Assembly: GCA_048013815.1 (NCBI GenBank) | Contig: CM106585.1 | Span: forward strand, 5,766,001 to 5,830,000 | Origin: Setoptus koraiensis | Taxonomy: Eukaryota; Animalia; Arthropoda | Direction of reading: 5' to 3' | DNA: 64,000 bases | Shown here: positions 16,047 through 59,261 of the stretch, piece by piece | How the letters are laid out: each line of letters starts with the position of its first letter | Numbering within the stretch: the stretch's first letter is position 1 | Position numbers and translations under genes: made by a program | The notes under the pieces: model-generated | What the model was told of the DNA's origin: nothing | Seen by the model: the letters and a program-made list of their open reading frames with translations, nothing else | The model's database searches: none

Positions 16047-16048
<2 letters not shown>

Positions 16049-16093
<45 letters not shown>

Positions 16094-16107
16094 CGTGTGC
16101 GTGTGTG
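16049..16107. repeat. (GT)n microsatellite
   Basis: About 20 GT units followed by gcgt variants. Confidence 0.95.
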
Positions 16108-18591
16108 CAGGTGAATGCGGCCAGGTGGAGCTCGCGAGCCAGTGTGAGCCAGAATGAGCGAGCCTGGCACGGGCTCAAGGCTGCCAGGCTGCCGTTATTC
16201 CGGGAACTGGCAACGTGCAGCCAGCGAGCTGCCACAGAAAAGCCAAGCGGGCTCGGCGGGCAGAGGTCGAGATTATTCATTTATTCGCGCTCGTTTTTTG
16301 GGGCCACCACGTTCCACTCGGGCCCCATGGCTGCATGCGTGTGCCGCTGTGTGTGTGTGTGTGTTTGTTTGGCGGCGGCGGCCAGGTGAGGCGAGCGGGC
16401 TCCGCCGCCGCCGCGTTCACCTATTGAACCGACCGACTATTGAGCTGGCTGACTCTCTCAATTTGATTGATTGAAGCCCGCTTTTTGGCGAGCATCGGCC
16501 CACCGCTCGACTCGAGCGGCTCGTGCGGCTCGAGCGGCTCGAGAGCAGGGGAGTGACTCGCCGGGCTGCCAAGGCCGCCCTCCGCGCTCTATGCACACCA
16601 CGGCAATGTTTGTGTTGCATCGGGTTCTTGTTGGGCTCTTGTTGGGCTCGCGCTGGGTTCGCTCTGCCCTCGCGCTGGGTTCGCTCTGCCCTCGCACTGG
16701 GCTCGCGCTGGGCTGGCATTAGGTGCTCATTGTGTGCAATTCTCTCTCGTGAAGCGTCTCGTCGGTGGAGCCCCTTGCCAGTCGGGCCCTCGCAAGTCGG
16801 CCGCGGTGGGCGAGCGGCGAGATAGGGCGCCCCGAAAGAGGAGAACAGCGATTAGGTGGCCATAACAACTTGCAAATGGGTTGCGCGACGGGCCAGCAGT
16901 GCGCCAGTCGGTTGTCGATGGTTGCAAGTTGCGCACTGCAACGGCGCCCCATTTGCAACAGGAATCATCTTTCTTTTATATCACCAGCCAGCCAGCCAGC
17001 CAGCATCATGGCCCGCAAACACACAGTGATCGTCATATAATATCATCGCCAACACAGCCAGAGGCTAATAACATCGTGTAGGTGGCCGTCGTAATTTCAA
17101 GCCAGCCAGCCCGACCGACCGACAGTCAGTTAGTCGGTGTTGCCATTGTCCCTGTAGCTGTGTGTGTGTCGCCCCGGCTCCATCTTGCTCTTCTCGATTT
17201 CTAACTGTTATCACATGAGACCACATTGTGTGTTGGCCGTTCGCCGGCAACAACAACAACAGCAACAACGCCAACAACCAGCCAGCGACAACCACGACAT
17301 CGACTGACAACAACAACAACAACAACAACAACAGCGCACCGGCGATAGCGCTGGCAATAATAACAATAATAATATAAAAAAGAAATTACTCTCTCACTTT
17401 CACCACTTTTTATTGCATCTCGAGACATCATTGTTATCTCGCCAGAGTTACCTCGCCAGCTCGCCAGCTCGCCCGCTTGCCAGCTCACCGGCCCACAATC
17501 GCGCCCCAGCGCCGACGACTTGCCATCTCGCAATCGCGCCATCTCAACATTTCGCCGACTCGCCAACTTATCCGCGCCAGCACATAAATTGCTGGCAAGC
17601 CTCATACTGGGGCGCATTCAAACCAACAATCAAACTATGAGCCAATGTGTTACTTAATAATGGGGACCCTCGTGATAGCACTTGGCGCGCTCGCGCCCCT
17701 CGATAGTGTGCGTGCTGTTGGCTCTAGCGGGACGCTTCCAACTTCGAACACAACTGCCAAGTGGCCCCATACTCAGATAGAAATCGGCACACACACACAC
17801 ACAGCATAGTGCCCAGGGCGAAATTTTCTGTTCTAGCCAGCTATCCTTGCCATCAGCCAGCCAGCCAGCTATCCGACCAGCGGGCCCTTGGCGAGCCCAA
17901 TGAAACGGCCAGATATTTGCCAGCCACAGTGCGGGTTGCGGCGGCCCCACAACACAGGCCAGGGTTACGGCCCCACAGTGCAGTCCAAAGTTGCCTGCCA
18001 GATCGGCATGACACCGACGCTGTCTAATTCAATTCCTAATTCAAATCTCAAATTCAAATTCGCCACCGAGCGACAACTCGGAGTTTAGTTAACTTTAGTT
18101 AACAGCTGAATGTGTGATCCGATTCTAATTCTGGCCCCCTCGCTCGCTCCCTTTGCTCCCGTCGCATTATGTCGCCTTGTTTTGGCGCGTTGTCACTGTT
18201 ATTTCGGCGCGTTATTCGCACGTTATTTCGGCGCGTTATTCGCACGTTATTTCGGGGGCGCCATTATCCGCTCTTGCTTTTGCAGGCTGCCATTTGCTGG
18301 CTGGCTGGCCGGCTGGCCGGTCATCACGCCACGCGCGGCGCGACAAACGCGCTCTCCAGCGAGCCAGCTCGCCAATCTGGCAAAGTTCATTGGGCAAAGT
18401 GGGCGCCGGAGTGTGCAATTTTCGAGCTGGGGCCCGCTCGCAACTACACTGATTTGGGCTACCCACTGAACGTGCGCGAGCCGAGCCAGCGAGCGAAACG
18501 AAGCGACTCAAAACGAAACAACGCCGAGATGAAGCGAAACGAAACGACGAAATGAACTCAATTCGGCCCACTTGGCTCGCCCGCCCGCCCT

Positions 18592-18722
18592 AAACTGTCG
18601 GCCCAAACTATCGGCCCAAACTATCGGCCCAAACTATCGGCCCAAACTATCGGTCCAGACTATCGGCCCGAACTGTCGGCCCGAATTGTCGGCCCAGACT
18701 GTCGGCCCAGACTAGTCGGCTC
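18592..18722. repeat. 13-bp minisatellite, 10 copies, consensus A(A/G)ACT(A/G)TCGGCCC
   Basis: Units counted directly: aaactgtcggccc, aaactatcggccc x3, aaactatcggtcc, agactatcggccc, gaactgtcggccc, gaattgtcggccc, agactgtcggccc, agactagtcggctc. Confidence 0.95.
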
Positions 18723-20654
18723 AGACTAAACTAGGTGCAATATGCATGAGCAGTGACATGAGATGAGATGCTTCATCAGCGTTATTCGATGATGAATCGA
18801 CACAGGAAGCCGTAGCACGAGTGCCGCCGGCAGGCCCGCCACTGGCCCCCGGATGATGATTACATCATGAATATAAGCCGGCCTAATATATAAATTGTCT
18901 CGCAACTGGCTGGCTGTGGGCCGGCCAAAGTCACCAGTGCGCCAGTGCGCCGGGCTGGCGGGCCGTCGGCTGTGGCACCTTGTTGACCGCAACGAGGCGC
19001 GGTTGTGACGTAAGCGTTCGAACGTAAGGTGCTCAAAACGGCGGCAGTTGCCGCGCCGCCGAATAAAGCGGATAAAGCGGATGAAGCGAATAAGTGAGCG
19101 AATGGGGCGAATAAGGCGAATGGGGCGAATATGCGCGACATAAATTTGACAATTGTCACAGCCGTCTGTTTGTGTGCCGTCTATCAGTTGGCGCTGGTGA
19201 CACTGGTTTGCCGTGCAACCGTTACACTATAACGGCCCGTTATTAACGGGCCGCTGGTGGGGCGAGCTTGCTTGCCTAAGCGATGACGCAACGTGACGGG
19301 CTGTTTGCTGGCGCAGCGGCCCGTTTCTAATTAGTTAAATGCAGCTCTTACAATGAGGGGCTCGCGCACAGATATACTCTGACACAAATATGGCGGGCCC
19401 GTTGGTATTCGCGTGCCAATTTGCTGGCGAATTAGCGCGTTTGTTGTTTGCGTTTGGCCCTCGTCGCCCTTTTATGGGTGCCCGCGACTGGGGGCCATTC
19501 ATCGCGCGGCCAAGGTGTCATCGTGATTCGACGGACACTGTCGCGAGTCGCGACACCGCGGGATCGCGCGACACCGCGCCATTGGTGCGAGAAAAAAGCC
19601 AAATATGACCGACTGACGCGGGGGACCGGAGCGCGAAAAATGGCCCACGCTCAGCGCTGATTGGTGGCCGGCCGATAACACACAGCGCTACATGACATGT
19701 CGCGTATTCATCAATTGACAGTGATTCATGAGCTAATGGTCATCAAGCGCTAATGGCTCGCGCTTATCGGCCATCGACTGCGGCGGCCCGGCCAACACGG
19801 ACAACACGTAGCACGTGCCATTTGTCGCGTATGCGCCCCGTGTTAGGGACTGGGTGCGTTAAGCTGCGTTTAAGCTGCGCGTTTGGGCCCTTCTAATTGC
19901 ACGCGAATCGCCATCTGTTTTTTGGTGGCTTTTCAGCTTTTGACAAGACAATGAGCGTTGCAAATCTCGGCAATGGCGCTGCAAATGATGTGTGCATTTA
20001 TTTATTTTTATCCAAGTGCGTTGGCGGGCTCTCATAATACGCGATTCACCAGAGAGTCTCCTCAGGTCTCTGTCTCGAGGAGCGCGCTCGCTGTCAGCGG
20101 GCTCGTATCTGTTGGCCTGTGTCGCTGTCAGTGTCAGCCGAATGATTGGTCGTGACCAGAAAGAGAATCGAATATAATATAATCAGGCAGGGGCGCCGCA
20201 CAACAACAACTTGCACAAATACCCAAACAGCTGCGCAGTCACTTAGTCAGCGCTAGCCGAGGGGCCCCGCGACACTCGGTCTTGCCAGCGATGGCTGGCT
20301 AGACCGATATAGTGTAAGTGGGTTAGTCGAGCCGCCAGCGCCAGTCATTAAACACACGTTAGCAGAATGCCAGATGAATGAGCCTCATCAGCATGGTGTG
20401 TCCCACCCTAATCGATTTGTCGCTATATGGCGCCCCCTCTCGCGCGCTCGCTGCTATGCGGTCCCATGTATCCGATGCAGCGGGCGGCGGCGGGCGCATT
20501 GTCAGTGTCAGCGGCGTTGTTGTTGTTGGCGGCGGCGGTGATAGTTTTGTTGACAATGTACTCTAGGAAATGCTCTGGCGCTCTTGTTCGCCGGGCCCCG
20601 CCGTCATCAGCAGCGCCAACAACCTATGGCAGCGACCACGGCGCCCGCCAACAG

Positions 20655-20788
20655 CAGACAACGGCGACACCAACAACAACAACAACAACGGCAACAACAA
20701 CGGCAACGGCAACGACGACAACGACAACAGCAACGACGACAACGACAACAGCAACGACGACAACGACGACGACAACAACAACAACAAA
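20655..20788. repeat. (CAA/CGA/CGG)n trinucleotide repeat
   Basis: Long imperfect triplet run seen directly. Confidence 0.9.
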
Positions 20789-23700
20789 TAAACGACTAGA
20801 CGCGCGACAATATATATAGACTGTCACGATTAATTTAATAGGATATACTGGCCTGCTTCAGGCGCCAAGTGCCAAGACGGGCCCCAAGACAGCCAACACA
20901 ACTGCATCTATCCAGTTGTGATAGTGGGGCCAGTGGGGCACCTAGCTGGCGCCTACTGGCGTTCACTCTAACAAACAACTGGCTGGTTGTCGGTTGGAGC
21001 TGGCCAGTGTGAGGCTGCTCGTGGTCAGTCAATTATTTATCGTGCAAAACAACTAACATTATTAGTTTATACACTGGGTATTATCAGGTATTAGTTGCTC
21101 AAGATTAGCTACGGCCACTCGAGCGCCCCTCCGCGGCCCGTTCTTGATATGTTTGCACCATTGGTCTATTGCGTCTCGGGCTTACTCTTTAATCTCTTTC
21201 GCGCTCTCTCACAATTGTTAATCCGGCGTGTCGTCATGATTGTTGTTCGCGCCAACTTTCTTATCATGACTTACTCCATTGATTGAAAGATCTCTCCGTA
21301 TCGATCGGCTCGCCAGACACCGGCGATGATAAAGATTATCATCTGTCATTGACACACACACATAGACGGCGTAGCTGGGGGCCAACGTGACCGAAACACC
21401 ACCGATCGCCAATTGAGCCAGTACTGATTGCAGGCACTTGTTATATGTGAGCGTGTAGTTTGGATGCACTTTTTTCTGAGGCAATTTTTCAGCCTGTCGA
21501 CCATTAAAAAATCGACTGAAAAAGTTCACTTGAGAAAACATCGCCAAGGCTGATTGGTGTTGTTCGCTGGGGGGAACGCGCCAGCATGGCGCAGAAAGAC
21601 TTCGGACACATACACGTCCGTTTCGGGACATTCTCGGAAAAGTTTCACCTTCAAAAGGCGAGCTTTTCAATTTTTCGGTTCGGCCGAAAAAGCGAAAAGC
21701 CGCCCGTCGGGTTTTGCCATTTTCATTTGAGCGCTCGCCACTTCGGTCGGCGGCGAGATCGGCCGCATCCCGCACAGTGCACGAGTGGTTGCAATTTCGG
21801 ACCACTGGGGCCGCGTGATCATGGTGGAAAAACTTTTTCGCAAGATTTTTCGGCGCGCTTGTTTGGCCGAAAAATTGAACGAGCGTCGCCGAAAAATTGA
21901 ACGAGCGTCGCCGAGAAAAAAAACGTTTCTATTGCCGGTCGCCCTGAACGAACGCGCCGCTCTGATCTCATTTTTGCCGCTTTTCGTTTGCCAGTTTGCC
22001 CATTCAGGCCTCTGTGGGGCCCCGCTAATTGCCTAACCAGTCCATTAGTCAGCGGACTGTCACTTGTTATTATTGCAATTATAAAAACAATGGTGATGAC
22101 GCTCATAAACGGGGGCTGCTGTTTTGGCTGCTGTTTTGGCTGTTGTTTTTGCTGCTGGCGGCGCTTTTGAGGATTTTACAAATGTGCGCTTTGCGCGCTG
22201 ACAAAACTTGAGCCATTTATAAAATTCTCGAAAATAGTTTCAGGAAGTGACTCTTCAATTTTGTTTCATGCCCGCCCGCCCGCTCTCACATGCGTGCATA
22301 ACTTGACTGTATCGACTGCGGCTGTGCGCGTTATCTCTGCCGGGCCCGTGTCATACTTGCGACTGAGAGTGGTTAGTTAAAGTTGAACACGGGGGCCCCC
22401 GCTAGTTACTATTTAGTGAAAAGTGGACTATCTCTCGAGATGATCTGTGTTTGTGTTTGTGTGTGAGCGTTGTTATCTCGCCCAGTTATCTAGATGTATT
22501 TTCGGCAACTAATGTTACAATACGACGATTTATAGAAGCTTATCTATCTCGCTGGCTGAGCTGAGCGTCGATATCGCTCTCGTCTCGCAGACGACTCATA
22601 GACGACTCATATACGACTGTCCTAGAGGCGCGCACATTCAAGTGATTACATGTTTTGTTGGATCATCGTCGCTCGGCTTGATCACCGCACACAATGTACA
22701 TACGAATCGCATGATACGACTGGCATGATACAAGTTGCTGCGGTGATACAACTGCCAGTTCTTGGCAGTTGCATCACCGCGGCTGATATGGCACTGAGCG
22801 AAGTGGCGAGAATTTCTGTCCAATTGAACGAACAAACAAACGCGCGCACACAAACAAACAAGCCACACACAAACTGCTGAGATTTGTTGCCGATACGAGC
22901 ACAAACGATAGTTTCGGGGTCCCAAAATGATTGATTGGGACTCTATGGACACATATCGCACACTGGGCCCGCTCCCGGCGCGACGACCGGCCGCTCTCAG
23001 TTACAGATGAGTGGATCGGTGCGCGGCCGGCGGGCCCCGATAATGATTGGCCAGGCGATTTCTGTGGCGATTTCTGTGGCGATTTCTGTGGCGAGCCAGC
23101 CGCGCCATTGGCCAGGTTGGCCGGCCGACGGCGAGCGATTCGAGCGAGTGTCCGGTCGAGACGGCGCTCGGGAGCTGCAACGACAGTGCCGTCCGCGCCA
23201 ACACGTTGCTGCAAGTGGCCCAGCGTGTAAAATATGATGGCATGTGATGGTACAAAAATTTGTATATCACATGCATCATGCAACCGGCTAACGGCAATTG
23301 TGCAACAATGCAATTAGAGATTCATTGCTGGCTGCACCGCCGCAGTGCTAATCTGGTCGCAGTGCTAATCTGGTCGGAGTGCCGGCGCCCATTCTAAATT
23401 CAATTTCGCCATATGTGCCAACTGGCTCGGCAACGCGCCCACCGGGGCGTTTGCGAGCCGGTTGTGCGGGTGTGTTCAACTTGGATCGTTTGAGTGGGAC
23501 AGGGCAGTGAAAAACTGAATTATTGTGCGCAGGGATTTGTTTCATTAGCAACGGGGCCCCCGCTCGTATGATATACGCCATTGGGCGCCTATTAAATCTG
23601 CCATATCTATTGTATCCGCTACGTGTGCCACATCTGCTGCGTTTGCCGTATCTGCCGCCTCGGCCGTATCTGCCGCGTTTGCCGTACCCGCTGTAGCCGG

Positions 23701-25116
23701 CCCTACGGCCGACACAGCAGACTGTGCCGCCCGAGCGAGCCGCGCAACCCGACGGACAAAGCGGTTTGCGTGAGCCGGCAGCCCGACAGTTGGCCAGCCG
23801 TGAACGGCGCCACTAGCTGCTCATTATGCTAACTAGCTAACCCCATTGTGCCGGCGCCGCCGCGGCCCGAAACGGCCAGCGCCCGCCAGCGTCTAACCAT
23901 AGGTGTCTTGGCCAATTTACAGCGCCGCACACTCAAACACGCACAGCCAGTTGGGCGAGAAGATTATGTTCATTAGGGGCTTATTGTGTAAGTGGCGTCA
24001 CTTTATTTATCACTGCTCACTGGCGCCCGGCGCTATCTCGAGACCCGCTATTGTGGCCCGACGGGAGCCGCTGCCCCTGCCAATAAAGACAATTACAATT
24101 CACTGTATGTTACAGGTATTAACCGGTGGGCGCCCGAGCGGCTCACAAGCTCGTGCCCGTGCCCGTGCCCAGACGAGATATCGCGCTCGTCTAGCCGCTG
24201 TCTTATCTTGTGCGCGCTGGCGTGCGCAAGCTTGCATTTGCACTCATCCGTAAATTCGAATCACCAATTTCCTTATTCTTATGCCCTATTACCGAGCTAT
24301 AATTACTATTTGCTGGCTGCGTTGCTGTGATGCAAGCTCGCCAATCTTGCCATCGATTGTGTGCTCTATGGCAACGCCCAGCCAGCGCCCGATAGCTGGG
24401 CCGTGGCGAAGCGAGCAAGTTTGCCGTCACTTGCAACGTAGTCGTCCCCTGTTGGCGTCTAGCGACACCATCTTGCAACCGACTAGCAACTTGGAACAGG
24501 TAAGCGCCACTTCCGCCCGCGCGCCGCGCCTCAAAACTGGGGCGCGGCGCAAACAATTTCCAGTCAGCGCCAGACCGGAGAGGCCGCACGACGGCGCCCG
24601 AAAGCGGCACGACGGCGCCCGAAAGCGGCACAACAACGGCAACAGCAACAACAATTGCGCGTATTCGGTCGCCGAAGCGATCGTCGCGGTGATGCCAACT
24701 GTGTACTGCTGGCAATATCATCAATAATGAATGTGCTCTTTGCCGAGCTTGCCAGCCAACAAACTGCTCACCTGGCAAGCTGTTTGTGTTGTGTTTCAAT
24801 CAATTTGGCCATAGGATAGCAGGCAGGCAGCATTCATTCAATTACTTACTGCCGTAAATCGTTGTCGCGAGCTAACCGAACGACGACACGCAGCCAAACA
24901 CTCGGTGGTTGAGTCAATGCAAATAGCAAGTTAGCTGGCATTTGATTTATTGCCGATGCTAATGACCTTCAGCAGGATCCATTAGATATCCATACAATCT
25001 ATATTAAGCAGTGGTTGTGTGGTGGTGGTGCACAGTAGACAGTTTAGACAGTCGGTTACATGCAGTGATTGAATAAACGCCGGCTACTTGCCGGGTGTTT
25101 ATTAACTCAGCTCGCG

Positions 25117-27627
25117 CTAGCGAAGCTTCTTTTCTTTCATCTGATCTGTTGCGACGCTGTTTGTGTCGGCTTGGCGGCTTGTTGTTGTTGTTGTTTGTCC
25201 AATATTATCCGAAATGTTAATTGGCGCGCCACCATTTTTGCTGCTAGCAATCACTCGCGATTTTCGGCCCACGCCAAGCAGGCGCAACAGTAACGCAATG
25301 AGGGGCATCTCTAGCCAGGCCGATATCACAAATGATAGCAATTGTGTCAATATTACGATCGTGACACACTCCTTCGCAAATGTCACAAACTCCATCTTGT
25401 ACGGGTCGCTCCTGGTGTTCAATAGGTAAACTATAAGCGGACAATGAATGAGCAGGCTGGTGAGGCTCGTTTTTGAGGCCGCCTGCCAGATTGGCCACGA
25501 CAGAAAATTGGCTACTATTTGTAAGCGCCCGGTGGCCATCAGCGACAGTAAAACGGTCATCATGAGACTAAATGTGTAAGCTGAAGTGCCATAGAGCAAG
25601 GCCGGAAATAGTCGCTCGGTGAACACATTGACGGGCGTCATGGGCAGCACAGTATTTGCAAACAAGGCCACCAAAAATAGACAAAAAACATATGGATAGC
25701 GATTTGTATTGATGAGCCAATGATCGTCAAATTCCGCTTGTTTGTATCTGTAAAGAACGTGGCCGGCCATGAGGCCCATCAGATAGGGCACAACTCTAAA
25801 TTGGGGCAACGTGTACACGGTGGACAATTGATCCATGCCCAGTCTGAATGCCTCATAGTTGAAATGTATCAATGGCAACACATTGTACTGGCACCAATAC
25901 ACATATGTCACATGTGCTGCGGCCACCAACAATATGTAAACAATGATAAAATTGTAGGTTGCTTTTTGATAACGGTGCATACACCAAATGATAAACGGCG
26001 TAATAAATGCAAATTGAATGTCATTGGCCAAATACCAGCCGGGCGGCAGACAATGCTGAATGGGCGATTTGTTGTTGGCCATGACAAAAAACACCGACAT
26101 CCAGCTCTCTTGTTCGCATTCACGAACGAGGCTCCCGTTAGAGGTGCCATAGTCCCACAGAGGCCCCGAGCCGGTGTATTTAAATACCGATTTGCAGAAC
26201 CATACCACCAGGGCCCACATGGGCACTATTCTGATGTAGCGTGTTGCAATGATCATTATCCACGAGCTGGGCCGCTGGCAAAGTTTTGTCACGCCGAACT
26301 TGAATAGATTGTACGAGGTCAATATGCCGGTTATGACGAAGAAAGTGTTCACCCACAAAATAGGCGTTATGTTCCAAATAAACAATAAACTGTGCCTGAG
26401 TTCGTCTAATTCAAACATATTGCTCGATCTGGCCGTGTAATACATAAAAGCGTGACCACCAACTATGTAAAACATAATGAACGTTTTAACGCCATTCACA
26501 AACGCAAAATCTACCACTCTTGAGCTATTTCCGGTTTCCAGTGTCTCTTTTTCGTCATGGCTTTTGTCATTCGAGTTGTTCGGGTGATAATGAAACATTT
26601 TGTGACAGTTGTGCTGAATGGACAATTGTCTAATTATGTCGTCATCGATATCATCGCGCAATCCTAGCAAGGTGACAACACTGGCCAACATAACCAACGA
26701 AAGCCACAGGCTGATAAAAGTCACGAAAATACTTGCTGAAATGTTGGTCAGCCACCAGTGGCGATTCTCCGAATTGTTATCTGGCAGACAATAAATTGAA
26801 TTTAGTTCAAGGTCTTGAGTGGCATTATTCAAATTTGTTTTTGCTAACTTGGATAATAGTTGCATATTTCTGCTACTGGCGCCGCTAATGCTATCGCATG
26901 CTTCCGGTACGCACAATCCCATTTCTATGTTTGACATGTGTCTCACATCGCGATCCTTAGGAAGACAATTGGCCACTAGCAATCTGTTCCAATTGGGCGC
27001 TTTCATTTTAGCCACACAATATCTCGTCTTGACAATTTCCTCTTGTTCGTTGTCGCCAATACCATTTAATTTATTATTTGCTGCTCTCTCATTGATCACA
27101 ACAAGTCTAGAATTCAAACATTGCTCATAGTTACCTTGCCAGAAAACGTTGCCGGTGAGAAGGCCCGCTGCGGGCTTGCCATGCGAGTCCATTATGTTCA
27201 TAATTGAAAAATCTGCGCTTGTGAAAATTTTAGATTGGCCATCATTAGTTGCCCGTTGCAGCATATAGTCTAATAGCTTTGCACACCTTTCTTCATTTGA
27301 CACAGTTCTATTTATGTATAGACCAATGTTGTTTTCATCCGCATCATAATGGTGCACTGAATGCACCGGCGATACTGTTATCTTGAGCAATGCCTCAAAG
27401 TTGGCCACAAAAAATTCGTCCGATCTGAATATTGAGTTATTTTCATTTTTTTCTCTATTATTGTTGTATGTGCTTCTACTGGAATTTCGCACACTTTCGA
27501 ATGGTGGGGCGCCACATTTTTCGCGACCTCTTTGCTTCGGTAACTGGGGCAGTAGAAGTGACAAGATTGATACTATTGCGATGCAATAAATCACTATGAA
27601 AATATCTATTCTGTTAGATGGATGCAT
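25117..27627 (-). CDS. nrf-6: Nose resistant to fluoxetine-6 (NRF-6)-like protein: NRF domain plus acyltransferase-3 multipass domain
   Basis: 836-aa intronless ORF. N-terminal hydrophobic leader; NRF-domain motifs (IMDSHGKPAAGLLTGNVFWQGNYEQC, RYC, GLCVPEAC); acyltransferase-3 motifs (VNGVKTFIMFYIVGGH, VNTFFVITGIL, RYIRIVP, WYLANDIQ, YTLPQFRVVPYLMGL) with about 10 TM segments. Confidence 0.9.
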   Translation of the reverse strand: MHPSNRIDIFIVIYCIAIVSILSLLLPQLPKQRGREKCGAPPFESVRNSSRSTYNNNREKNENNSIFRSDEFFVANFEALLKITVSPVHSVHHYDADENNIGLYINRTVSNEERCAKLLDYMLQRATNDGQSKIFTSADFSIMNIMDSHGKPAAGLLTGNVFWQGNYEQCLNSRLVVINERAANNKLNGIGDNEQEEIVKTRYCVAKMKAPNWNRLLVANCLPKDRDVRHMSNIEMGLCVPEACDSISGASSRNMQLLSKLAKTNLNNATQDLELNSIYCLPDNNSENRHWWLTNISASIFVTFISLWLSLVMLASVVTLLGLRDDIDDDIIRQLSIQHNCHKMFHYHPNNSNDKSHDEKETLETGNSSRVVDFAFVNGVKTFIMFYIVGGHAFMYYTARSSNMFELDELRHSLLFIWNITPILWVNTFFVITGILTSYNLFKFGVTKLCQRPSSWIMIIATRYIRIVPMWALVVWFCKSVFKYTGSGPLWDYGTSNGSLVRECEQESWMSVFFVMANNKSPIQHCLPPGWYLANDIQFAFITPFIIWCMHRYQKATYNFIIVYILLVAAAHVTYVYWCQYNVLPLIHFNYEAFRLGMDQLSTVYTLPQFRVVPYLMGLMAGHVLYRYKQAEFDDHWLINTNRYPYVFCLFLVALFANTVLPMTPVNVFTERLFPALLYGTSAYTFSLMMTVLLSLMATGRLQIVANFLSWPIWQAASKTSLTSLLIHCPLIVYLLNTRSDPYKMEFVTFAKECVTIVILTQLLSFVISAWLEMPLIALLLRLLGVGRKSRVIASSKNGGAPINISDNIGQTTTTTSRQADTNSVATDQMKEKKLR

Positions 27628-51795: not shown

Positions 51796-53964
51796 CTATT
51801 TTCGCCGTCTAGCAGCTTTCGGTTTAGTCGTGACAGATGTACTAATATTATCTACAGGGGTCTTATTTAAATTTACAAAATTATTTACACCTTGATTAAT
51901 TATCGTATCCAGCGTTGTTTGTAGTGAACGAACGGGAACGCTGTCTGGAAACATATCAGGAAAACGACAGCCCAGCCACAGATAAAGGTCAAACACGTCA
52001 AATACTTGCTCTAAATGAGCCAAATCCGTGACGTTCTTCGGCGCCTCTACAGGCCATTGAAGTTGCTGACATAACCACTCTATAGTAACTGGCTCATTCG
52101 AACTGAATTGTCTTACAAATCTGACGAACATAGCAACAGCAAAAGTGCTTTTGTTGTTGATTGGGGCACAGCAAAACAGGTAACGTGCCTTAAGGGGAAT
52201 TTGAATATGTTGAATATGTTCGGCCAGTAATTTGAATTGTTCCATATCGCAGATGAAGTAGTTTGATGTATCTAACTGACATATATCAATAAACAGATCT
52301 ATTAGATCACTAAGACTCAGATGGGGTAGATAGTAGGAGAACAATTCTATCTGATCTGAAGTTGGATGAAGACCAGCTCTATCAATTAGATCCGGGGTAT
52401 TTTTGAGAAGATCAGTCAAAGTCGATAAATCTTCCGGTCTGAAGGTAGTGACGAAACCTTGCTCATACTGTGTTTTGAATCTTCCTGCCCTGCCCGCTAT
52501 CTGTAGAGCTTGGGATACAGATATAAGCTCTTTCTTGATAACTTTATCCTTGATGTCCATGCCCAATTTAATTAGGGAGTGAAAAATCACCCTTTTTATA
52601 CTGAGATTTAATCCCATTCCGATGGCATCGGTAGCGACTAAAATTTTACATTTGTTCGAGGGATCGTTGAATCTTTCGCATTGTCGCAATTTGGTTTGCG
52701 GTGGCAAACTACCGTATATAACAGCAAACTTCAAATCTCTCTTTTCTAATCCTTTACATACACTGTAGAGATCATCTTTGTTGAAACACACAATACAATC
52801 GCCAGCTTGTACGTTATCAAGACTTCGCAATGCTTGTTTCTCAACGACCAACGGCGTCAACCTTTCGTATCGCTGTAGTTGTAAATCCTCCCCCATTCCT
52901 TCAATGATTTCTTTGATACAATGTAAAGCTGCCTCTTCACCACATAAATGTAATTCTTTAGCTGGTATGCCGAGTAGAGCCCTCGTCCATGCCCATCCTC
53001 TCTGAGGATCTCTCATCATCTGAATCTCGTCTATCACTGCCACCTCAACTGGTTCGTGAGTTTGGACCATCTCCACAGTACATGAAGTGTGCTTCGATCG
53101 AGTGTAACCATCTGGATTGGCAAACTTTCTTTCTTCACCAGTGACTAGATCGCAAGGGGTACCAAAGTTGTTGGATTTTTGATACACTTCGTGGGCTAAT
53201 AATTTCAGTGGACCGCAGTAGACTCCACTATCAGATTCGTAGAACCTTTGCAGTGCATTATATGTCTTACCGCTATTTGTTGGGCCACTATGAAAGTAGA
53301 TTTTCCTTATCATTCCCCTCGCCTCTGGATACCAATTAGGTGGATCTTTCAGGTCACTTATTTTCTTCAGCTCCTTCTGACATTCTAAGTGAGGAAATGC
53401 TTGGCGAGCATGAGTCAAAAAGAAAGGAAGCAAATCGCTGGCGTCACAGTGTTCATCGAGTATATCTATAAATCTAATATGTAGCTCAGGGGGCAGACTA
53501 GCTGATTTTAGACAGTATTGCTTGAAGCTCATCCATGCCTTGTAGAATAATTGTGGGTCAATATCGTGGATTTCTTTGAGAACCTTGCGTATCGAGGGTA
53601 GCTGATAGAACTTCAACAGGATTTTGTTCATACCAATTTTGTCGAGTTTTTTTCCAGCAATTTCTTCGCCGATCTGACCGAATCTATCCTCCGGTTCCGG
53701 CAACACTTCTTTGGCGTATAAGCTTCCGAAAGCTTTTTCTTTCACATCATTTCCATAAGGCTTGGCAGTTCTATTAATGACGTTCTCATATACTTTCACT
53801 GGCCTAATCGTACGATCACTGGACTTTTTAGGGCTCCTAAAATACTCAGATTTGATTGTGGACGATAGCAACCGAAGACAATGACGCGTATTCTGGGCGT
53901 CTAGACGACCCAGCTGATGAGCTCGATAAATTCTCAGAAATGAGGGCCTAGCAAAGGTTGCCAT
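51796..53964 (-). CDS. SUPV3L1: Mitochondrial ATP-dependent RNA helicase SUV3
   Basis: 722-aa intronless ORF with an Arg-rich presequence, PPNWYPEAR, HSGPTNSGKT, YCGPLKLLA, IDEIQMMRDPQRGWAWTRALLG, ATDAIGMGLNL and QIAGRAGR. Confidence 0.97.
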   Translation of the reverse strand: MATFARPSFLRIYRAHQLGRLDAQNTRHCLRLLSSTIKSEYFRSPKKSSDRTIRPVKVYENVINRTAKPYGNDVKEKAFGSLYAKEVLPEPEDRFGQIGEEIAGKKLDKIGMNKILLKFYQLPSIRKVLKEIHDIDPQLFYKAWMSFKQYCLKSASLPPELHIRFIDILDEHCDASDLLPFFLTHARQAFPHLECQKELKKISDLKDPPNWYPEARGMIRKIYFHSGPTNSGKTYNALQRFYESDSGVYCGPLKLLAHEVYQKSNNFGTPCDLVTGEERKFANPDGYTRSKHTSCTVEMVQTHEPVEVAVIDEIQMMRDPQRGWAWTRALLGIPAKELHLCGEEAALHCIKEIIEGMGEDLQLQRYERLTPLVVEKQALRSLDNVQAGDCIVCFNKDDLYSVCKGLEKRDLKFAVIYGSLPPQTKLRQCERFNDPSNKCKILVATDAIGMGLNLSIKRVIFHSLIKLGMDIKDKVIKKELISVSQALQIAGRAGRFKTQYEQGFVTTFRPEDLSTLTDLLKNTPDLIDRAGLHPTSDQIELFSYYLPHLSLSDLIDLFIDICQLDTSNYFICDMEQFKLLAEHIQHIQIPLKARYLFCCAPINNKSTFAVAMFVRFVRQFSSNEPVTIEWLCQQLQWPVEAPKNVTDLAHLEQVFDVFDLYLWLGCRFPDMFPDSVPVRSLQTTLDTIINQGVNNFVNLNKTPVDNISTSVTTKPKAARRRK

Positions 53965-54458
53965 GGTTGAAGGTGTCAGGTTGATAATCGATGATATATG
54001 TCAGTCTAAATGAATAAATGATTACATAATGATGAAGTTTTACTTTTGCGGCACGTGTTTCGTAAACGGCCAGACAAGTCAGAGGAGATTATTAATGCAA
54101 TGAAGAAAAATAATTGTATTCACTTTTGTCCAATAACTGAAGCGCTATATTTGAATCTTTTTCTAACCACGTGAGTCCTGCAAAATCACATACTGCACTA
54201 TGCGTGTGTTCGAAATGGAGAATCGAAAAGCTGCAACATGAGAAAAATAAATAAACTCACGTGGCTAAAGAAATTTTTAAATATGGCGCTTCGGATAATG
54301 GGCCTTAGGTGGACATTCTTCTCATGGTGTAAAAAGAATCCACTTCTGGTCATAAATTGACTTAAACTGCGTCTAATTAATTGCACTTGTTCAACTGTAT
54401 TGTTATTATTGTTGTTGTTATTATTAATTTGTTCTTTCTATTGTATGTAGTTAATATT

Positions 54459-56783
54459 ATGACGGATAACAACAATGAATCATCTTCACCGACTAAATCT
54501 CTGGCTCGATCTGTAACAGATAAATTTAATCATCATCATAATGGTAATAATGATTCAACAGGAAAGCCAAACTCCAAGAAATGGTTCGATTTACACAGGA
54601 AACGTTCTCTCCTGCCCGTTTGGGAACACAAGGAAAAGTTTATGAAGGCCTTAAGAGAAAACCAAACACTGTTGTTGGTGGGCGAAACTGGTAGTGGCAA
54701 AACAACACAAATTCCACAATGGTGCGTGGAGTATTGTCGCAAAAACAAATCAGGTCGCGTTGCCTGCACTCAACCAAGGAGAGTTGCCGCCATGTCTGTT
54801 GCCAAAAGAGTTGCCGATGAAATGAACGTGGAGCTGGGCCAACAGGTTGGTTATTCGGTGAGATTTGAATCTCTGGAATCTGATAAAACTGTGCTCAAGT
54901 ACATGACAGATGGAATGCTTCTCAGAGAGGCCATGATTGATCCCTATCTTGATTCATATGCAATCATAATCCTGGACGAAGCTCACGAGAGAACTCTTCA
55001 AACCGAGATATTATTTGGTGTAGTTAAACGTGCCCAAAATAACAGAAATAATAATTTGTTGCGAAATCAGCATGAAATCAACAGTGATAGTTCTACAGCA
55101 AGAGGAAACGCCTTCAAGTCACCCTTAAAGGTGATTGTTATGTCGGCCACTGTCGATATTGATCCCTTCAAGAAATATTTCAAAGCCCCTTGCTTACAAA
55201 TACACGGAAGACAATTCCCTGTGTTCGAAATGGTATCAGAGACACCTCAGACGGATTATGTTAACTCAGCTATAGTGACAGTCTTCCAGATACATCGTAC
55301 TTGCGCTAGCGGGGACATTCTCGTATTTTGCACAGGTCAAGACGAGATAGAGTCCATGATTAGAACATGCAAGAAAGTCTTATCACAAGCGCCTGAAAGC
55401 CTTAAACAATTGACCGTTCTACCTCTATATGCCTCACTACCTGCCTCTCATCAAATGAAGATATTCACAATTAATCAGCTCCACAATGATCGGGACGATG
55501 ATCAAAAACACAGGAGGGTTATATTTGCTACTAACGTTGCTGAAACGTCCATAACGATACCTAATATAAAATACGTGGTAGATACCGGTAAAGTTAAATG
55601 TCGACATTACTGCCCTAAGACTGGGCTCGATGTTCTCAAAGTAATACCAATATCCAAATCTCAAGCCAAACAAAGATCTGGAAGAGCCGGGAGAGTAGCC
55701 GCTGGCCATTGTTATAAATTATATACCCAAGAAGAATACGATGATATGAGAGATTTCATGGTGCCTGAAATTAAACGATGCAACTTAGATGGCGTAATAC
55801 TTCAAATGATCTCAATGGGTATTCGAAATATTAACGGCTTTGATTTCATGGATAAACCTGAAGAAGATCGTTTGCGATCTGCTATCATTGATCTAAAAGA
55901 ATTGGGTGCGATCAAATCTGAACAATCGGACAAAACCTCATCAATTAATCACACAATTTCTAAGCTACCTTCTCAACTCAATGGTGATACAACCAACTCG
56001 GCAAAGAAGCACGAATCAATTGAAAAATTAGATAGACCTGATTTTACTAACGGGCTCAAGAAAGTCAAATTAACCAACAATAATTCTAACTCCATGGTAA
56101 AAGCTCAAATATCAGAACTTAATAACTCATACATCTTAACTAAACTTGGTCAAAGATTATCAGTGTTTCCGGTTAAACCCTGTTTGGCTAGAGTAATAGT
56201 GTCTGCTAATGATTCCGGTTGCCTCGATGAAGCACTAACTATCATTTCAATGTTGTATATTGAAAATCTATTTTACATCCCAGCAAACAAGAAGAACCAA
56301 GCTAATATGATATTGAAGAAGTTCCAAAGTAATGAGGGTGATCTCATAATGTTTCTCAATGTATTCAAAGCATTCAAGAGAGCATCAAAATCTAATCAAA
56401 TGAATAGTAAATCATGGTGTAACGAACATTTTATTCACACCAAAAACCTCAGGCTGGCTATAGAGGTGAGAAAACAGTTAACTCTTGTATGTCGTAGATT
56501 TGGCATGCCCGCATCATCATGCGGTCAGAACACTGAGATTATAAGACGTTGCCTGTGCCATGGCTTGTTTACCAATTTTGCCAAACTTATTAACGGTAAA
56601 TATCAGACAAGCAAGATTGCTGATCGTGATATATACATACACCCCGCGTCATGTCTATTTCGATCCAAACCTGAGGCAATAATTTATACCGAAATTGTTG
56701 AAACTAGTAAATGCTATATGCGGAACATAACATTGGTAGATTCCAATTGGATAAAGGAGTCACGTACGAAATCTACAGACTAG
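54459..56783 (+). CDS. DHX33: DEAH-box RNA helicase, DHX33-like over most of its length with a DHX15-like N-terminal RecA1 segment
   Basis: First ATG at 54459. GETGSGKTT, TQPRRVAA, DEAH, MSAT, TNVAETSITI and QRSGRAGR motifs, plus HA2 and OB-fold tail (IHPASCLF...KCYMRN). Confidence 0.85.
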   Translation: MTDNNNESSSPTKSLARSVTDKFNHHHNGNNDSTGKPNSKKWFDLHRKRSLLPVWEHKEKFMKALRENQTLLLVGETGSGKTTQIPQWCVEYCRKNKSGRVACTQPRRVAAMSVAKRVADEMNVELGQQVGYSVRFESLESDKTVLKYMTDGMLLREAMIDPYLDSYAIIILDEAHERTLQTEILFGVVKRAQNNRNNNLLRNQHEINSDSSTARGNAFKSPLKVIVMSATVDIDPFKKYFKAPCLQIHGRQFPVFEMVSETPQTDYVNSAIVTVFQIHRTCASGDILVFCTGQDEIESMIRTCKKVLSQAPESLKQLTVLPLYASLPASHQMKIFTINQLHNDRDDDQKHRRVIFATNVAETSITIPNIKYVVDTGKVKCRHYCPKTGLDVLKVIPISKSQAKQRSGRAGRVAAGHCYKLYTQEEYDDMRDFMVPEIKRCNLDGVILQMISMGIRNINGFDFMDKPEEDRLRSAIIDLKELGAIKSEQSDKTSSINHTISKLPSQLNGDTTNSAKKHESIEKLDRPDFTNGLKKVKLTNNNSNSMVKAQISELNNSYILTKLGQRLSVFPVKPCLARVIVSANDSGCLDEALTIISMLYIENLFYIPANKKNQANMILKKFQSNEGDLIMFLNVFKAFKRASKSNQMNSKSWCNEHFIHTKNLRLAIEVRKQLTLVCRRFGMPASSCGQNTEIIRRCLCHGLFTNFAKLINGKYQTSKIADRDIYIHPASCLFRSKPEAIIYTEIVETSKCYMRNITLVDSNWIKESRTKSTD

Positions 56784-57425
56784 ACGCAACTGTGAGGATT
56801 TGAACGATAGACCCCTGACAGCCTTTGTGATGTACAGTTAGTTAGTTTTCATGTAAAGTAAAATAGCCTCTACTATACTAGCACTCTTTATAGTTAGTTC
56901 ACCCAATCTTTTATTCTATAGCTAAGGATCAACAAGAACTTGACTCTGGATGTTTGTTCCTGAGTACAATTTCAGACGAATTAAGTGATCCGATCTATAA
57001 CTGATTAGATACATACTGTATCTTCGTAGAACATACATATAAGGCTCTTCAAATCGAAGCTGATCTTCTGGTGTGGATGACAAACTAACTCGGTACATGA
57101 ATAATGCATAGCCTTCACGCGAACGCAATGATTTGATCGTCAGACTCATGACAGGATGAATTTGCCACAATCAATCAAGGTATTATATAATGATCGTCTG
57201 CGTTCTTATCAGAAAGCAATCTCTATATAGACATAATGGAGAGCTTTCGTACATATTCGTTATGATGGAGATTATCGTAAGGATTACGAATCTTGTAGCC
57301 ATCTCAAGAACCTAAAAATGTTGAAATTTTCGAGCCGTTCAGGATAATACACGTATAGGTCAGATAGATGCTATTGACTACAGTGTGCGCCATCATTAGG
57401 CCGGGCGAATGGAGCTTCATGTGAA

Positions 57426-57868: not shown

Positions 57869-59261
57869 ATGATGCTGGGTCAAATAAATCGAGTGATATC
57901 AGTTAGTCTGATGAATATTTCTAAACATCAGCGTAAAATTGGAAGTAAATTGGGGACAACTGTTGTGGGACTCTCATTTTTTGCCCCATTATCCACTAAA
58001 AAAGACAATGATTGCTTGACATATATTTGGACTGATGAGAATATATCCACCTTTATGGCCGAGCCCATAACAAAGAGGGATGTTCTTAAGAAAGAGAACC
58101 AACAGATGAGACACCTTATGGAGCTATTCATACTTGGTATTCAGCGTGATGTATTCATGTCACTTAAAAAATTCGAACAGGATGCCCAAGATCAACATGA
58201 ACAACACAGCGATATCATAGCCGCAACTGAGGTCAGACGAGGTGACAACACTTTGCAAAAAACCAATAAACTAGAGGATATGATAATAATCGATAGATGG
58301 CAGAGAGAAGAGGGTGGCGGCGGAATCAGTTGTCTCATACAAAATGGTAGAGTCTTTGAAAAGGTAAACTATCGAAATCACAACGATATCTCATCTAACT
58401 CACCCATTGATTTCTAAAACTTCAACTACGTGTCATGTTTGAATTATCTCAACACTTTATCAGGCGGGAGTTAATATTAGTGTTGTCCACGGAATGTTAC
58501 CTCCAGCGGCTGTTCAACAGATGAGAGCGAGAGGGAAACAGTTTTCTCAAAATAAACAAGGCGATTCCACTCAGATTCCATTCTTTGCCGCCGGAGTTAG
58601 CTGTGTTATTCATCCGAGAAACCCCAATATACCAACAATACACTTCAATTATCGTTATTTTGAGATCCCATCTCATCAATCAGACAACCAAAATGACTCA
58701 CAGGAGCCCAGCATGTGGTGGTTTGGTGGAGGCACAGATCTCACTCCGTATCTGTTAGACGAGCAGGATGTCCGACATTTTCATCGAGAGCTCAAGAAAG
58801 CATGCGATAAGAGTGATAAAACTTTCTATCCAAAATTTAAAGAGTGGTGTGATAAGTATTTCTACATCACTCACAGAGGAGAATGTAGAGGTGTTGGCGG
58901 TATATTTTTCGATGACGTAGACTATCCAAATCAGTCGAAAGCCTTCAAATTTGTCAGGGATTGTGCGAATGCGGTGCTGCCTTCCTATCTGCCTTTGATT
59001 GAGAAAAATATACTCAAAAGTTTCACAGATGAAGACCGAGATTGGCAACTCTTGAGACGGGGTCGCTACACTGAATTTAATTTAGTCTACGACAGAGGCA
59101 CTAAATTTGGTCTGGCCACACCCGGAGCCCGAATCGAGAGCATACTGATGTCCCTTCCCTTGTATGCGAAATTTTATTATCCACGAGGCCAAACAAGCAA
59201 TCCAAATCACGAAAAACTGACACAAGTTCTCAAAAAACCCAAAGAGTGGTTATCTGTCTGA
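57869..59261 (+). CDS. CPOX: Oxygen-dependent coproporphyrinogen-III oxidase, 2 exons
   Basis: Exons 57869-58363 and 58464-59261 (100-bp GT-AG intron; 431 codons). DRWQREEGGGGISC, VFEK|AGVNISVVHG, HPRNPNIPTIHFNYRYF, WWFGGGTDLTP, RGVGGIFFDD, RRGRYTEFNLVYDRGTKFGL. Confidence 0.97.

What the first reader, a model, noticed from the sequence alone, without database searches (positions are those of the whole stretch)
54591..55030. Apparent DHX15 x DHX33 chimeric DEAH helicase
Seen and recalled: from LPVWEHKEKF through QIPQWCVEY, VACTQPRRVAAMSVAKRVADEM, LGQQVGYSVRFE, LKYMTDGMLLREAMIDP to IILDEAHERTL the protein matches DHX15/Prp43-specific residues; DHX33 has LPIFQ, QIPQYLYE, IAVTQPRRVAAISLA and IKFLTDG there. 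Immediately afterwards it switches to DHX33 signatures: LFGVVKRAQ, PLKVIVMSATVDIDPF, GRQFP, PQTDY, VFQIH, VLPLYASLP, IKYVVDTGKVK, GLDVLKV, PEIKRCNL and KCYMRN. Inference: ectopic recombination or conversion from the DHX15 paralogue replaced most of RecA1 (motifs I-II) in DHX33, with a breakpoint near the DEAH motif (about 54975-55015). This could alter G-patch cofactor dependence or ATPase coupling in rRNA biogenesis.
Basis: partly seen in the sequence, partly recalled or inferred. Interest (0 to 1): 0.75.

Follow-up and report, generated by a model that had tools for sequence, protein, structure and literature searches.

The report
DHX15-fronted DHX33 helicase in mites
This plant-feeding mite's DHX33 RNA helicase gene carries a front end copied from a different helicase gene (DHX15), and about 30 related sequences, the only named one from another plant-feeding mite, share the same splice point, so it is an old, naturally fixed hybrid of two essential enzymes rather than an assembly error.

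Summary
The intronless gene at 54459-56783 (+) encodes a 774-aa DEAH-box helicase with all motifs I-VI intact.

- **Front part (residues ~31-180):** the end of the N-terminal extension plus RecA1 up to DEAHERTL. It is DHX15/Prp43 by score, tree and signature residues.
- **Rear part (residues 181-774):** the lineage's DHX33 orthologue, nested among acariform-mite DHX33.
- **Switch point:** between codons 180 and 181 (nt 54998|54999), inside the interval 54957-55001.
- **Incongruence:** each half rejects the other half's tree position (AU p = 0.015 and 4e-36).
- **Not an artefact:** contigs from other sequencing runs cross the junction colinearly. All 30 nearest protein clusters, including Aceria tosichella, have the same architecture and form one clade in both halves.

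The event is ancient and lineage-wide, not private to this genome. DHX15 homology also runs almost to the start codon, so there is one junction (a 5'-DHX15/3'-DHX33 fusion), not a two-ended conversion patch. The G-patch idea is unsupported, because G-patch proteins bind the WH and RecA2 domains, which are DHX33-derived here.

I could not test whether a canonical DHX15 or a second DHX33 exists in this genome. I found no published description. The scan's index held no earlier DHX15/DHX33 note.

The parts
54459..56783 (+). Complete intronless CDS of the chimeric DEAH-box helicase (774 aa plus stop). The open frame starts upstream at a TTG at 54381; the first ATG is at 54459.
   Evidence: ORF list. 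Pfam: DEAD, Helicase_C, HA2_C, OB_NTP_bind. Motifs I, Ia, Ib, II, III, IV, V and VI are all intact. AF2 model has mean pLDDT 83.7 and pTM 0.80.
54549..54998 (+). DHX15/Prp43-derived segment, residues ~31-180. It holds the end of the DHX15 N-terminal extension and RecA1 strands and helices with motifs I, Ia, Ib and II.
   Evidence: PDB scores; region search gives 68-74% identity to metazoan DHX15; trees; HMM log-odds +49 bits; the N-terminal-extension match alone has E 1e-11 to 1e-16 to DHX15; the Y-C pair after QWC(V)E is shared with acariform DHX15.
54957..55001 (+). Junction interval, codons 167-181 (IILDEAHERTL|Q). The best point is between codons 180 and 181 (54998|54999). The sequence between the last and first diagnostic residues is invariant in both families.
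   Evidence: Cumulative log-odds maximum at residue 180. The consensus of the 30 relatives switches at the same place. In the model this is the loop between strand 167-172 and helix 180-207, with pLDDT above 90.
54999..56780 (+). DHX33-derived segment, residues 181-774: the rest of RecA1 (motif III), RecA2, and the WH-like, ratchet-like and OB domains.
   Evidence: The full-length search finds named DHX33 as the nearest family after the chimera clade. Rear-part trees nest it in acariform DHX33. AU rejects grouping with DHX15.
55047..55124 (+). Lineage-specific low-complexity insert 1 (residues ~197-222), after the helix that follows motif II.
   Evidence: Gap in all DHX15 and most DHX33 rows. 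pLDDT is 57-77.
55911..56123 (+). Lineage-specific disordered insert 2 (residues ~485-555), in the loop of the winged-helix region. Its length varies among relatives.
   Evidence: Identity to relatives is 0.10-0.20 there. pLDDT is below 50 for residues 497-541. PDB matches split into two stretches around it.

Best explanation
This is a fixed, ancient inter-paralogue fusion gene. Its first ~540 coding bases come from a mite (acariform-type) DHX15/Prp43 gene. They encode the N-terminal extension and RecA1 through the DEAH box. Everything downstream is the lineage's DHX33 gene.

Shown here:
- The two parts have different phylogenetic origins.
- They meet at one junction, in the codons of motif II.
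- The hybrid is shared by a monophyletic set of about 30 related proteins, including Aceria tosichella, so it arose once in an ancestor and was inherited vertically.
- All catalytic motifs are intact, and the mosaic RecA1 is predicted to fold normally.

Inferred:
- The protein works as an ordinary ATP-driven 3'-5' DEAH RNA helicase doing the DHX33 job (nucleolar/ribosome-biogenesis role). Its ATP-binding P-loop half of RecA1 happens to be of DHX15 origin.
- Partner specificity should stay DHX33-like, because RecA2, WH, ratchet and OB are DHX33-derived.
- The junction arose by a single recombination in the highly conserved DEAHERT coding stretch. This could be illegitimate or non-allelic recombination between the paralogues, or a reverse-transcriptase template jump. 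It did not arise by exon shuffling.
For: Origin of the two parts:
- Front part scores 201 bits to DHX15 versus 169 bits or less to other DEAH families. The control with a canonical mite DHX33 is flat at 141-146 bits.
- Front-part trees: the chimera clade (99/97*) lies inside DHX15 (98/91*). With a DHX33 outgroup, DHX15 plus chimeras get 100/100* and the chimeras lie inside bilaterian DHX15 at 95/86*.
- Rear-part trees: the chimeras lie inside acariform DHX33 (99/99*), and DHX33 as a whole gets 100/100*.
- AU tests: front-part data reject the rear-part position (dlnL 58.9, p 0.015). Rear-part data reject a DHX15 position (dlnL 103, p 4e-36).
- HMM log-odds separate all 31 chimeras from the canonical DHX33 scored.

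Junction and donor:
- The breakpoint maximum is at residue 180.
- N-terminal-extension homology starts at residue ~31 here and at residue 6 in Aceria.
- The acariform-type Y-C pair after QWC(V)E points to a mite donor.
- Related mite DHX33 and DHX15 genes have no intron at the junction.

Reality of the gene:
- Contigs from other sequencing runs span 54000-57000 with only 1-2 differences.
- Motifs are intact. The model has pLDDT above 90 across the junction.
Against: - Expression of this gene was not shown; no run is on record as RNA.
- I could not test whether this genome also keeps a canonical DHX33 or DHX15.
- The front-part tree does not resolve the donor within bilaterian DHX15. It places the chimeras next to a nematode, probably by branch-length effects. 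An acariform donor is merely not rejected (AU p 0.36).
- A first AU design was uninformative (p 0.43).
- The mechanism that made the junction is inferred and left no detectable trace.
- The functional statement rests on family knowledge, not on an assay.
Confidence: 0.87

Rival explanations
1. The chimera is an extra, possibly neofunctionalised paralogue. A canonical DHX33 still exists elsewhere in this genome and does the normal job.
For: The rest of the genome could not be searched with these tools. The rear part sits on a long stem (0.58-0.65 substitutions per site), as expected after duplication and relaxed or changed selection. Synteny differs between the window and another chimera locus.
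Against: In the full-length search every protein scoring above the canonical-DHX33 level is chimeric. Nothing canonical falls between 758 and 665 bits. In the rear-part tree the chimera clade sits among acariform-mite DHX33, where this lineage's orthologue would be expected. Its sister is a clade of Halotydeus and two unnamed sequences, with no canonical co-orthologue inside or beside it.
Confidence: 0.13
2. A two-ended gene-conversion tract from DHX15 overwrote an internal patch of an otherwise intact DHX33 gene.
For: The 3' boundary lies in a stretch that is invariant in both paralogues, a natural end point for a conversion tract. The gene sits in an ordinary gene neighbourhood.
Against: DHX15 homology continues upstream through the N-terminal extension, where DHX33 has no similarity that could anchor a 5' boundary. 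In Aceria it starts at residue 6. No DHX33-like residues are detectable upstream of the DHX15 part. The paralogues are only about 52% identical in protein even in this best-conserved part, which is low for homology-dependent conversion.
Confidence: 0.12
3. There was no recombination. The front part merely retains ancestral DEAH residues, or converged on DHX15.
For: Many DHX15-like residues in 100-180 may also be common to other DEAH families (my own recollection, not checked here), and strictly diagnostic sites are few there. One AU design could not reject chimeras plus DHX33 (p 0.43).
Against: - The segment is specifically DHX15-like, with a 32-bit excess over every other DEAH family; canonical DHX33 shows no such excess.
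- It carries DHX15-only features: the N-terminal-extension motif, PVWE, QWC and the acariform Y-C pair.
- The rear part is nested among mite DHX33 whose front parts are all canonical, so retention would require reversal at dozens of sites. AU rejects that position (p 0.015).
Confidence: 0.02
4. The junction is an assembly or gene-model artefact.
For: Short conserved motifs can mis-join paralogues in assemblies. Several database DHX15/DHX16 models do contain artefactual internal duplications.
Against: Contigs from other sequencing runs, filed under other studies (depth 112x and 21.6x), cover 54000-57000 in one piece with 1-2 differences. The same junction occurs in 30 distinct protein clusters from unrelated assemblies and one UniRef entry.
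Confidence: 0.01

Closest known systems
DHX33 (DEAH-box helicase 33), animal orthogroup
   Same: Residues 181-774 (motif III, RecA2, ratchet-like HA2 and OB domains) are nested within acariform DHX33 with full support. Overall length and domain order match DHX33.
   Different: The N-terminal extension and RecA1 up to the DEAH box are not of DHX33 type. There are two lineage-specific disordered inserts. Pfam does not detect the WHD_HA2 domain, as in several other mite DHX33.
DHX15 / Prp43
   Same: Residues ~31-180 are 68-74% identical to DHX15 across Metazoa. They carry the DHX15 N-terminal-extension motif and the PVWE and QWC signatures, and they lie inside the DHX15 clade.
   Different: Everything after DEAHERTL is not DHX15. 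That includes the WH and RecA2 surfaces that bind G-patch cofactors (PMC9458436). It should therefore not behave as a Prp43-type, G-patch-activated enzyme.
Chimeric genes formed by paralogue recombination or by reverse-transcriptase template switching (chimeric retrogenes)
   Same: There is one junction joining the 5' part of one transcript or gene to the 3' part of another, and the product is intronless. The host lineage is one where cDNA-mediated intron loss has been proposed (PMC7738191). Template-switch chimeras are documented in other organisms (PMC2104539 and PMC5470649, listed).
   Different: Known template-switch chimeras are mostly pseudogenes or fusions with small RNAs. Here the two partners are homologous, are joined in register at a conserved motif, and the product apparently replaced an essential gene. 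No poly(A) tail, target-site duplication or other retroposition scar is visible or expected at this age, so membership is untestable here.

Membership tests
DEAH/RHA helicases (SF2) | Helicase motifs I, Ia, Ib, II (DEAH), III (SAT), IV, V and VI are present and intact. | tested here: met
   All eight were found at residues 75, 104, 150, 173, 229, 290, 358 and 405.
DEAH/RHA helicases (SF2) | C-terminal HA2 (ratchet-like) and OB-fold domains follow the two RecA domains. | tested here: met
   Pfam PF21010 and PF07717 score above their cut-offs. The model is confident over these domains.
DEAH/RHA helicases (SF2) | Winged-helix domain (PF04408) lies between RecA2 and the ratchet domain. | tested here: inconclusive
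   There is no Pfam hit. A helical segment is modelled at 444-494 and is interrupted by the disordered insert. Several canonical mite DHX33 also lack the Pfam hit.
DHX33 orthogroup | RecA2 to OB region groups with DHX33 to the exclusion of other DEAH paralogues. | tested here: met
   DHX33 including the chimeras gets 100/100*, and the chimeras lie within acariform DHX33 at 99/99*. AU rejects a DHX15 grouping, p 4e-36. Only DHX15 and one DHX16 model served as other paralogues.
DHX33 orthogroup | N-terminal part and RecA1 motifs I-II are of DHX33 type. | tested here: not met
   HMM log-odds is +49 bits towards DHX15, against -39 to -78 for canonical DHX33. Trees and AU p 0.015 agree.
DHX15 / Prp43 orthogroup | N-terminal extension plus RecA1 of DHX15 type. 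| tested here: met
DHX15 / Prp43 orthogroup | RecA2, WH, ratchet and OB of DHX15 type (the G-patch-binding body). | tested here: not met
   The rear part is 37% identical to DHX15 and 46% to DHX33. Trees and AU exclude DHX15.
DHX15 / Prp43 orthogroup | Activation by G-patch cofactors. | not testable with these tools
   This needs biochemistry. The literature places the contacts on WH and RecA2.
Chimeric retrogene (RT template switch) | Retroposition hallmarks: poly(A) remnant, target-site duplications, and an intron-containing parent at another locus. | not testable with these tools
   The gene is intronless, but so are most genes here. The parents were not located, and the age of the event would have erased any scars.

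The most novel reading that the evidence does not exclude
The hybrid may be a footprint of how eriophyoid genomes lost their introns. In this reading, a reverse transcriptase copying DHX33 mRNA from its 3' end jumped to DHX15 mRNA at the near-identical DEAH-box codons. The resulting in-register chimeric cDNA then replaced the resident DHX33 gene by the same cDNA recombination proposed for the intron purge. That would make it a functional template-switch chimera that took over an essential gene. It would also be a natural proof that the ATP-binding half of RecA1 is interchangeable between DEAH helicases with different cofactor logic.
Probability: 0.22. Interest if true: 0.62.

Novelty: new variant of a known kind. 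Interest (0 to 1): 0.5.

Why it matters
DEAH-box helicases are usually treated as orthologue lineages that stay distinct across eukaryotes. Here two essential paralogues with different biology were spliced inside a single RecA domain: DHX15/Prp43, a multi-purpose G-patch-activated enzyme, and DHX33.

The product was kept through the diversification of a whole mite clade. That amounts to a long-running natural domain-swap experiment. It suggests that the motif I-II half of RecA1 is functionally interchangeable, and that specificity resides in RecA2 and the C-terminal domains.

It also has a practical consequence. Orthology pipelines and BLAST-based annotation can mis-assign such genes: the front end hits DHX15 and the body hits DHX33. 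If the cDNA route is right, the gene also bears on how eriophyoid genomes were streamlined.

Tried and rejected
1. **Uninformative AU design.** Holding chimeras plus all DHX33 against DHX15 plus one DHX16 gave p 0.43. With three clades and one poor outgroup the design cannot discriminate, so I replaced it with the rear-part-derived constraint.
2. **Exon shuffling at a shared intron: rejected.** Halotydeus DHX33, Halotydeus DHX15 and Oppia DHX33 have no intron near the DEAH codons.
3. **DHX15-DHX33 tandem neighbours: rejected as evidence.** Long database models (P0001, P0002, P0123) hinted at this, but they are DHX15 models with internal duplications.
4. **Synteny to identify the recipient locus: uninformative.** The neighbours here are SUV3 and CPOX. 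They differ from those of another chimera (L001) and of Halotydeus DHX33 (L004).
5. **Finding a canonical DHX15 from a chimera-bearing organism: failed.** Sample look-ups, a word search with a mite DHX15 and a metagenome scan gave no pairing. No Aceria DHX15 was listed among the top 120 hits. This is a listing limit, not evidence of absence.
6. **Earlier scan notes.** There was nothing on this gene by words, sequence or place.
7. **A second, independent conversion in spider-mite-group DHX33 (P0060, P0063).** Only a neutral stretch around motif I and QWC was seen, and the rest is DHX33-like. I treat it as unresolved, probably convergence or divergence.
8. **Not run.** A fold search was skipped because it would only return DEAH helicases.
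Full report
**What is there.** Window 54381-56783 (+) is one uninterrupted open frame. The first ATG, at 54459, gives a 774-aa protein.
- Pfam finds DEAD, Helicase_C, HA2_C (ratchet-like) and OB_NTP_bind.
- All helicase motifs are intact: GETGSGKT, TQPRRVAA, TDGML, DEAH, SAT, FCTG, TNVAETS and QRSGRAGR.
- The neighbours are an intronless SUV3 helicase gene (51796-53964, minus strand) and a coproporphyrinogen oxidase gene (57869-59261).
- Earlier notes of this scan call the genome an eriophyoid mite. My only check of that is that the closest named relative of this protein is from Aceria tosichella. The gene is also intronless, as reported for most genes of a published eriophyoid genome (PMC7738191).

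**Checking the observation.**
- Against all PDB chains, residues 45-184 score 201 bits to human DHX15. They score only 165-169 bits to Prp2/DHX16, DHX8 and yeast Prp43, and less to DHX38 and DHX35.
- As a control, the same segment of a canonical mite DHX33 (Halotydeus) scores a flat 141-146 bits to Prp43, DHX16, DHX15 and Prp2. The 32-bit excess is therefore specific.
- The remaining 590 residues rank DHX15 well below DHX8, DHX35 and Prp16. DHX33 itself has no solved structure.
- A word search restricted to residues 45-184 returns DHX15 of all Metazoa at 68-74% identity.
- The full-length search returns about 30 unnamed proteins plus Aceria tosichella at 47-56% identity, then named DHX33 at 39-50%.
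- Residues 41-180 are 69% identical to DHX15 and 54% to DHX33. Residues 181-774 are 37% identical to DHX15 and 46% to DHX33.

**Breakpoint.** I ran a per-residue log-odds walk (DHX15 column profile versus canonical DHX33 column profile).
- It climbs from about residue 40 to a maximum of +123 bits at residue 180, the final L of DEAHERTL. It then falls monotonically to -918 bits.
- The last clearly DHX15-type residues are M159, D165, S166 and L180. The first DHX33-type residues are Q181, E183, F186, V189 and A192.
- The crossover therefore lies in nt 54957-55001, with the best point at 54998|54999.
- The consensus of the relatives switches at the same place: REAM...ERTL, then QTEILFGV.KRA as in mite DHX33.

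**Phylogeny.**
- On the front part (141 columns), the window protein plus its 30 relatives form one clade (99/97*) nested in the DHX15 clade (98/91*). Canonical DHX33 forms its own clade (96/95*).
- With DHX33 as outgroup and more DHX15 rows, DHX15 plus chimeras gets 100/100*. The chimeras sit inside bilaterian DHX15 (95/86*).
- On the rear part (503 columns), the same proteins form a clade (100/100*) nested in DHX33 (100/100*), and specifically among acariform mites (99/99*).
- With more rows, their sister is Halotydeus plus two unnamed canonical DHX33 (SH-aLRT 90).
- AU tests reject congruence in both directions. Front-part data reject the rear-part position (dlnL 58.9, p 0.015). Rear-part data reject a DHX15 position (dlnL 103, p 4e-36).
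- An earlier AU design (p 0.43) was uninformative. With three clades and one poor DHX16 model, the constrained and free trees hardly differ.
- Profile-HMM log-odds for the front part are +13 to +59 bits for all 31 chimeras. They are -39 to -78 bits for the canonical DHX33 scored.
- Long-branch attraction would pull these fast-evolving sequences away from the short-branched DHX15 clade, not into it.

**Not an artefact, and not private to this genome.**
- Logan contigs from runs filed under three other studies cover 54000-57000 in one colinear piece. Depths are 112x and 21.6x (two of the three look like one data set filed twice), with one or two base differences.
- The relatives come from unrelated assemblies (JGI, ENA and Logan samples) and are single-ORF genes there too.
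- The branching order of the chimeras is broadly the same in both halves: the window sequence first, then P0023, with the pairs P0012+P0014 and P0029+P0030.
- This fits one ancestral event followed by vertical descent, predating the split between this mite and Aceria tosichella.

**Extent of the DHX15 part and the donor.**
- The DHX15-like part does not begin at motif I. The segment before motif I alone matches the DHX15 N-terminal extension at E 1e-11 to 1e-16 for the window protein and 1e-14 to 1e-18 for Aceria. Its best DHX33 match is 6e-7 (one unnamed sequence), the rest 1e-3 or weaker.
- The match starts at about residue 31 in the window protein and at residue 6 in the Aceria protein. The whole 5' end of the coding sequence is thus DHX15-derived, and there is a single junction.
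- The chimeras share a Y-C pair after QWC(V)E with most acariform DHX15 examined. Ticks, spiders, horseshoe crab, insects, molluscs and vertebrates have other residues at the C. This points to a mite donor, that is, the lineage's own DHX15.
- The tree cannot resolve the donor. An acariform donor is not rejected (AU p 0.36).

**Mechanism of origin (inferred).**
- Related mite DHX33 and DHX15 genes have no intron near the DEAH codons. Exon shuffling is therefore unlikely, and the join lies inside an exon, in a stretch that is invariant in both families.
- Upstream of motif I there is no DHX33/DHX15 similarity that could anchor a 5' end, so a two-ended conversion tract is less likely than a one-crossover fusion.
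- Two routes fit and cannot be separated here. One is illegitimate or non-allelic recombination between DHX33 and a DHX15 copy.
- The other is a reverse-transcriptase template jump from DHX33 mRNA to DHX15 mRNA at the conserved codons, followed by cDNA recombination. Recombination with cDNAs has been proposed for intron loss in an eriophyoid genome (PMC7738191). Template-switch chimeras are documented elsewhere.

**How it most likely works (inferred from family knowledge).**
- The AF2 model (pLDDT 83.7, pTM 0.80) puts the junction in the loop between the motif II strand (167-172) and the following helix (180-207). pLDDT is above 90 on both sides.
- RecA1 is thus a mosaic. The strands carrying motifs I, Ia, Ib and II are of DHX15 origin, and those from motif III on are of DHX33 origin.
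- All ATP- and RNA-contacting motifs are conserved in both parents, so ordinary DEAH helicase activity is expected.
- G-patch cofactors bind the WH domain (brace helix) and RecA2 (brace loop) (PMC9458436). Both are DHX33-derived here, so a gain of Prp43-like G-patch control is not expected.
- The protein most likely serves as the lineage's DHX33. No canonical DHX33 lies inside or immediately beside the chimera clade, and nothing canonical scores between the chimeras and ordinary DHX33 in the search.

**Limits.**
- Expression was not shown; no RNA run was on record.
- I could not search the rest of this genome for DHX15 or a second DHX33. Attempts to pair a canonical DHX15 with a chimera-bearing sample failed.
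- Apart from DHX15 and DHX33, the trees held only one imperfect DHX16 model. The PDB scores stand in for the wider paralogue comparison.

**Novelty.** Full-text searches for DHX33, DHX15 and chimeric returned nothing relevant. The eriophyoid genome paper does not mention helicases. The scan's own notes held nothing under DHX15, DHX33, Prp43 or DEAH. The kind of event, an inter-paralogue chimeric gene, is known. This instance, in an essential DEAH helicase and fixed across a mite clade, appears undescribed.

Noticed in passing
P0060 (Brevipalpus) and P0063 (Panonychus) DHX33, front part: Spider-mite-group DHX33 carry QIPQWC and score nearly neutral between the DHX15 and DHX33 profiles (-6 and -13 bits, against -39 to -78 for other DHX33). 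They sit on a very long branch next to DHX15 in the front-part tree (93/81). Binned log-odds show only residues ~61-100 are neutral and the rest is DHX33-like. This could be a short independent conversion, convergence or plain divergence.
   Followed up: partly
window 10000-25000: A GC-rich block (0.50-0.67) lies in a ~0.40 GC context. It has only one ORF of 250 aa or more, no Rfam match and no strong tandem repeat. It is unexplained.
   Followed up: partly
window 55047-55124 and 55911-56123: Two low-complexity, disordered inserts in the helicase: one after the helix that follows motif II, one in the winged-helix loop. Both vary in length among relatives (673-868 aa proteins).
   Followed up: partly
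window 55628: All four laid runs read A where the window has C. This is the third base of codon 390, and I did not check whether it changes the residue. It may be an assembly base or a strain difference. Runs X3 and X4 also read G for A at 56387.
   Followed up: no
window 57869-58417 and 58494-59261 (+): Coproporphyrinogen oxidase is split over two ORFs. Pfam profile positions 21-54 fall in the first and 64-295 in the second. This is probably a short intron near 58400-58490, one of the few introns in this gene-dense stretch.
   Followed up: partly
window 51796-53964 (-) and 25117-27627 (-): An intronless SUV3 mitochondrial RNA helicase gene lies head-to-head with the chimera. Further upstream is an NRF-domain/acyltransferase_3 gene.
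   Followed up: partly
P0001, P0002, P0123, P0033 (database proteins): Public gene models of DHX15 (Helicoverpa, Paragonimus, Globodera) and a DHX16 model of Ixodes contain internal duplications of helicase segments. They are probably annotation or assembly artefacts, and they inflate search scores.
   Followed up: partly
L005, L006 (ENA ERZ25073694), L013: A small clade of intronless canonical DHX15 genes from unnamed mite-like organisms (P0125, P0126, P0180, P0205, P0229) is sister to Halotydeus DHX15. Whether these are eriophyoid DHX15 is unknown.
   Followed up: partly
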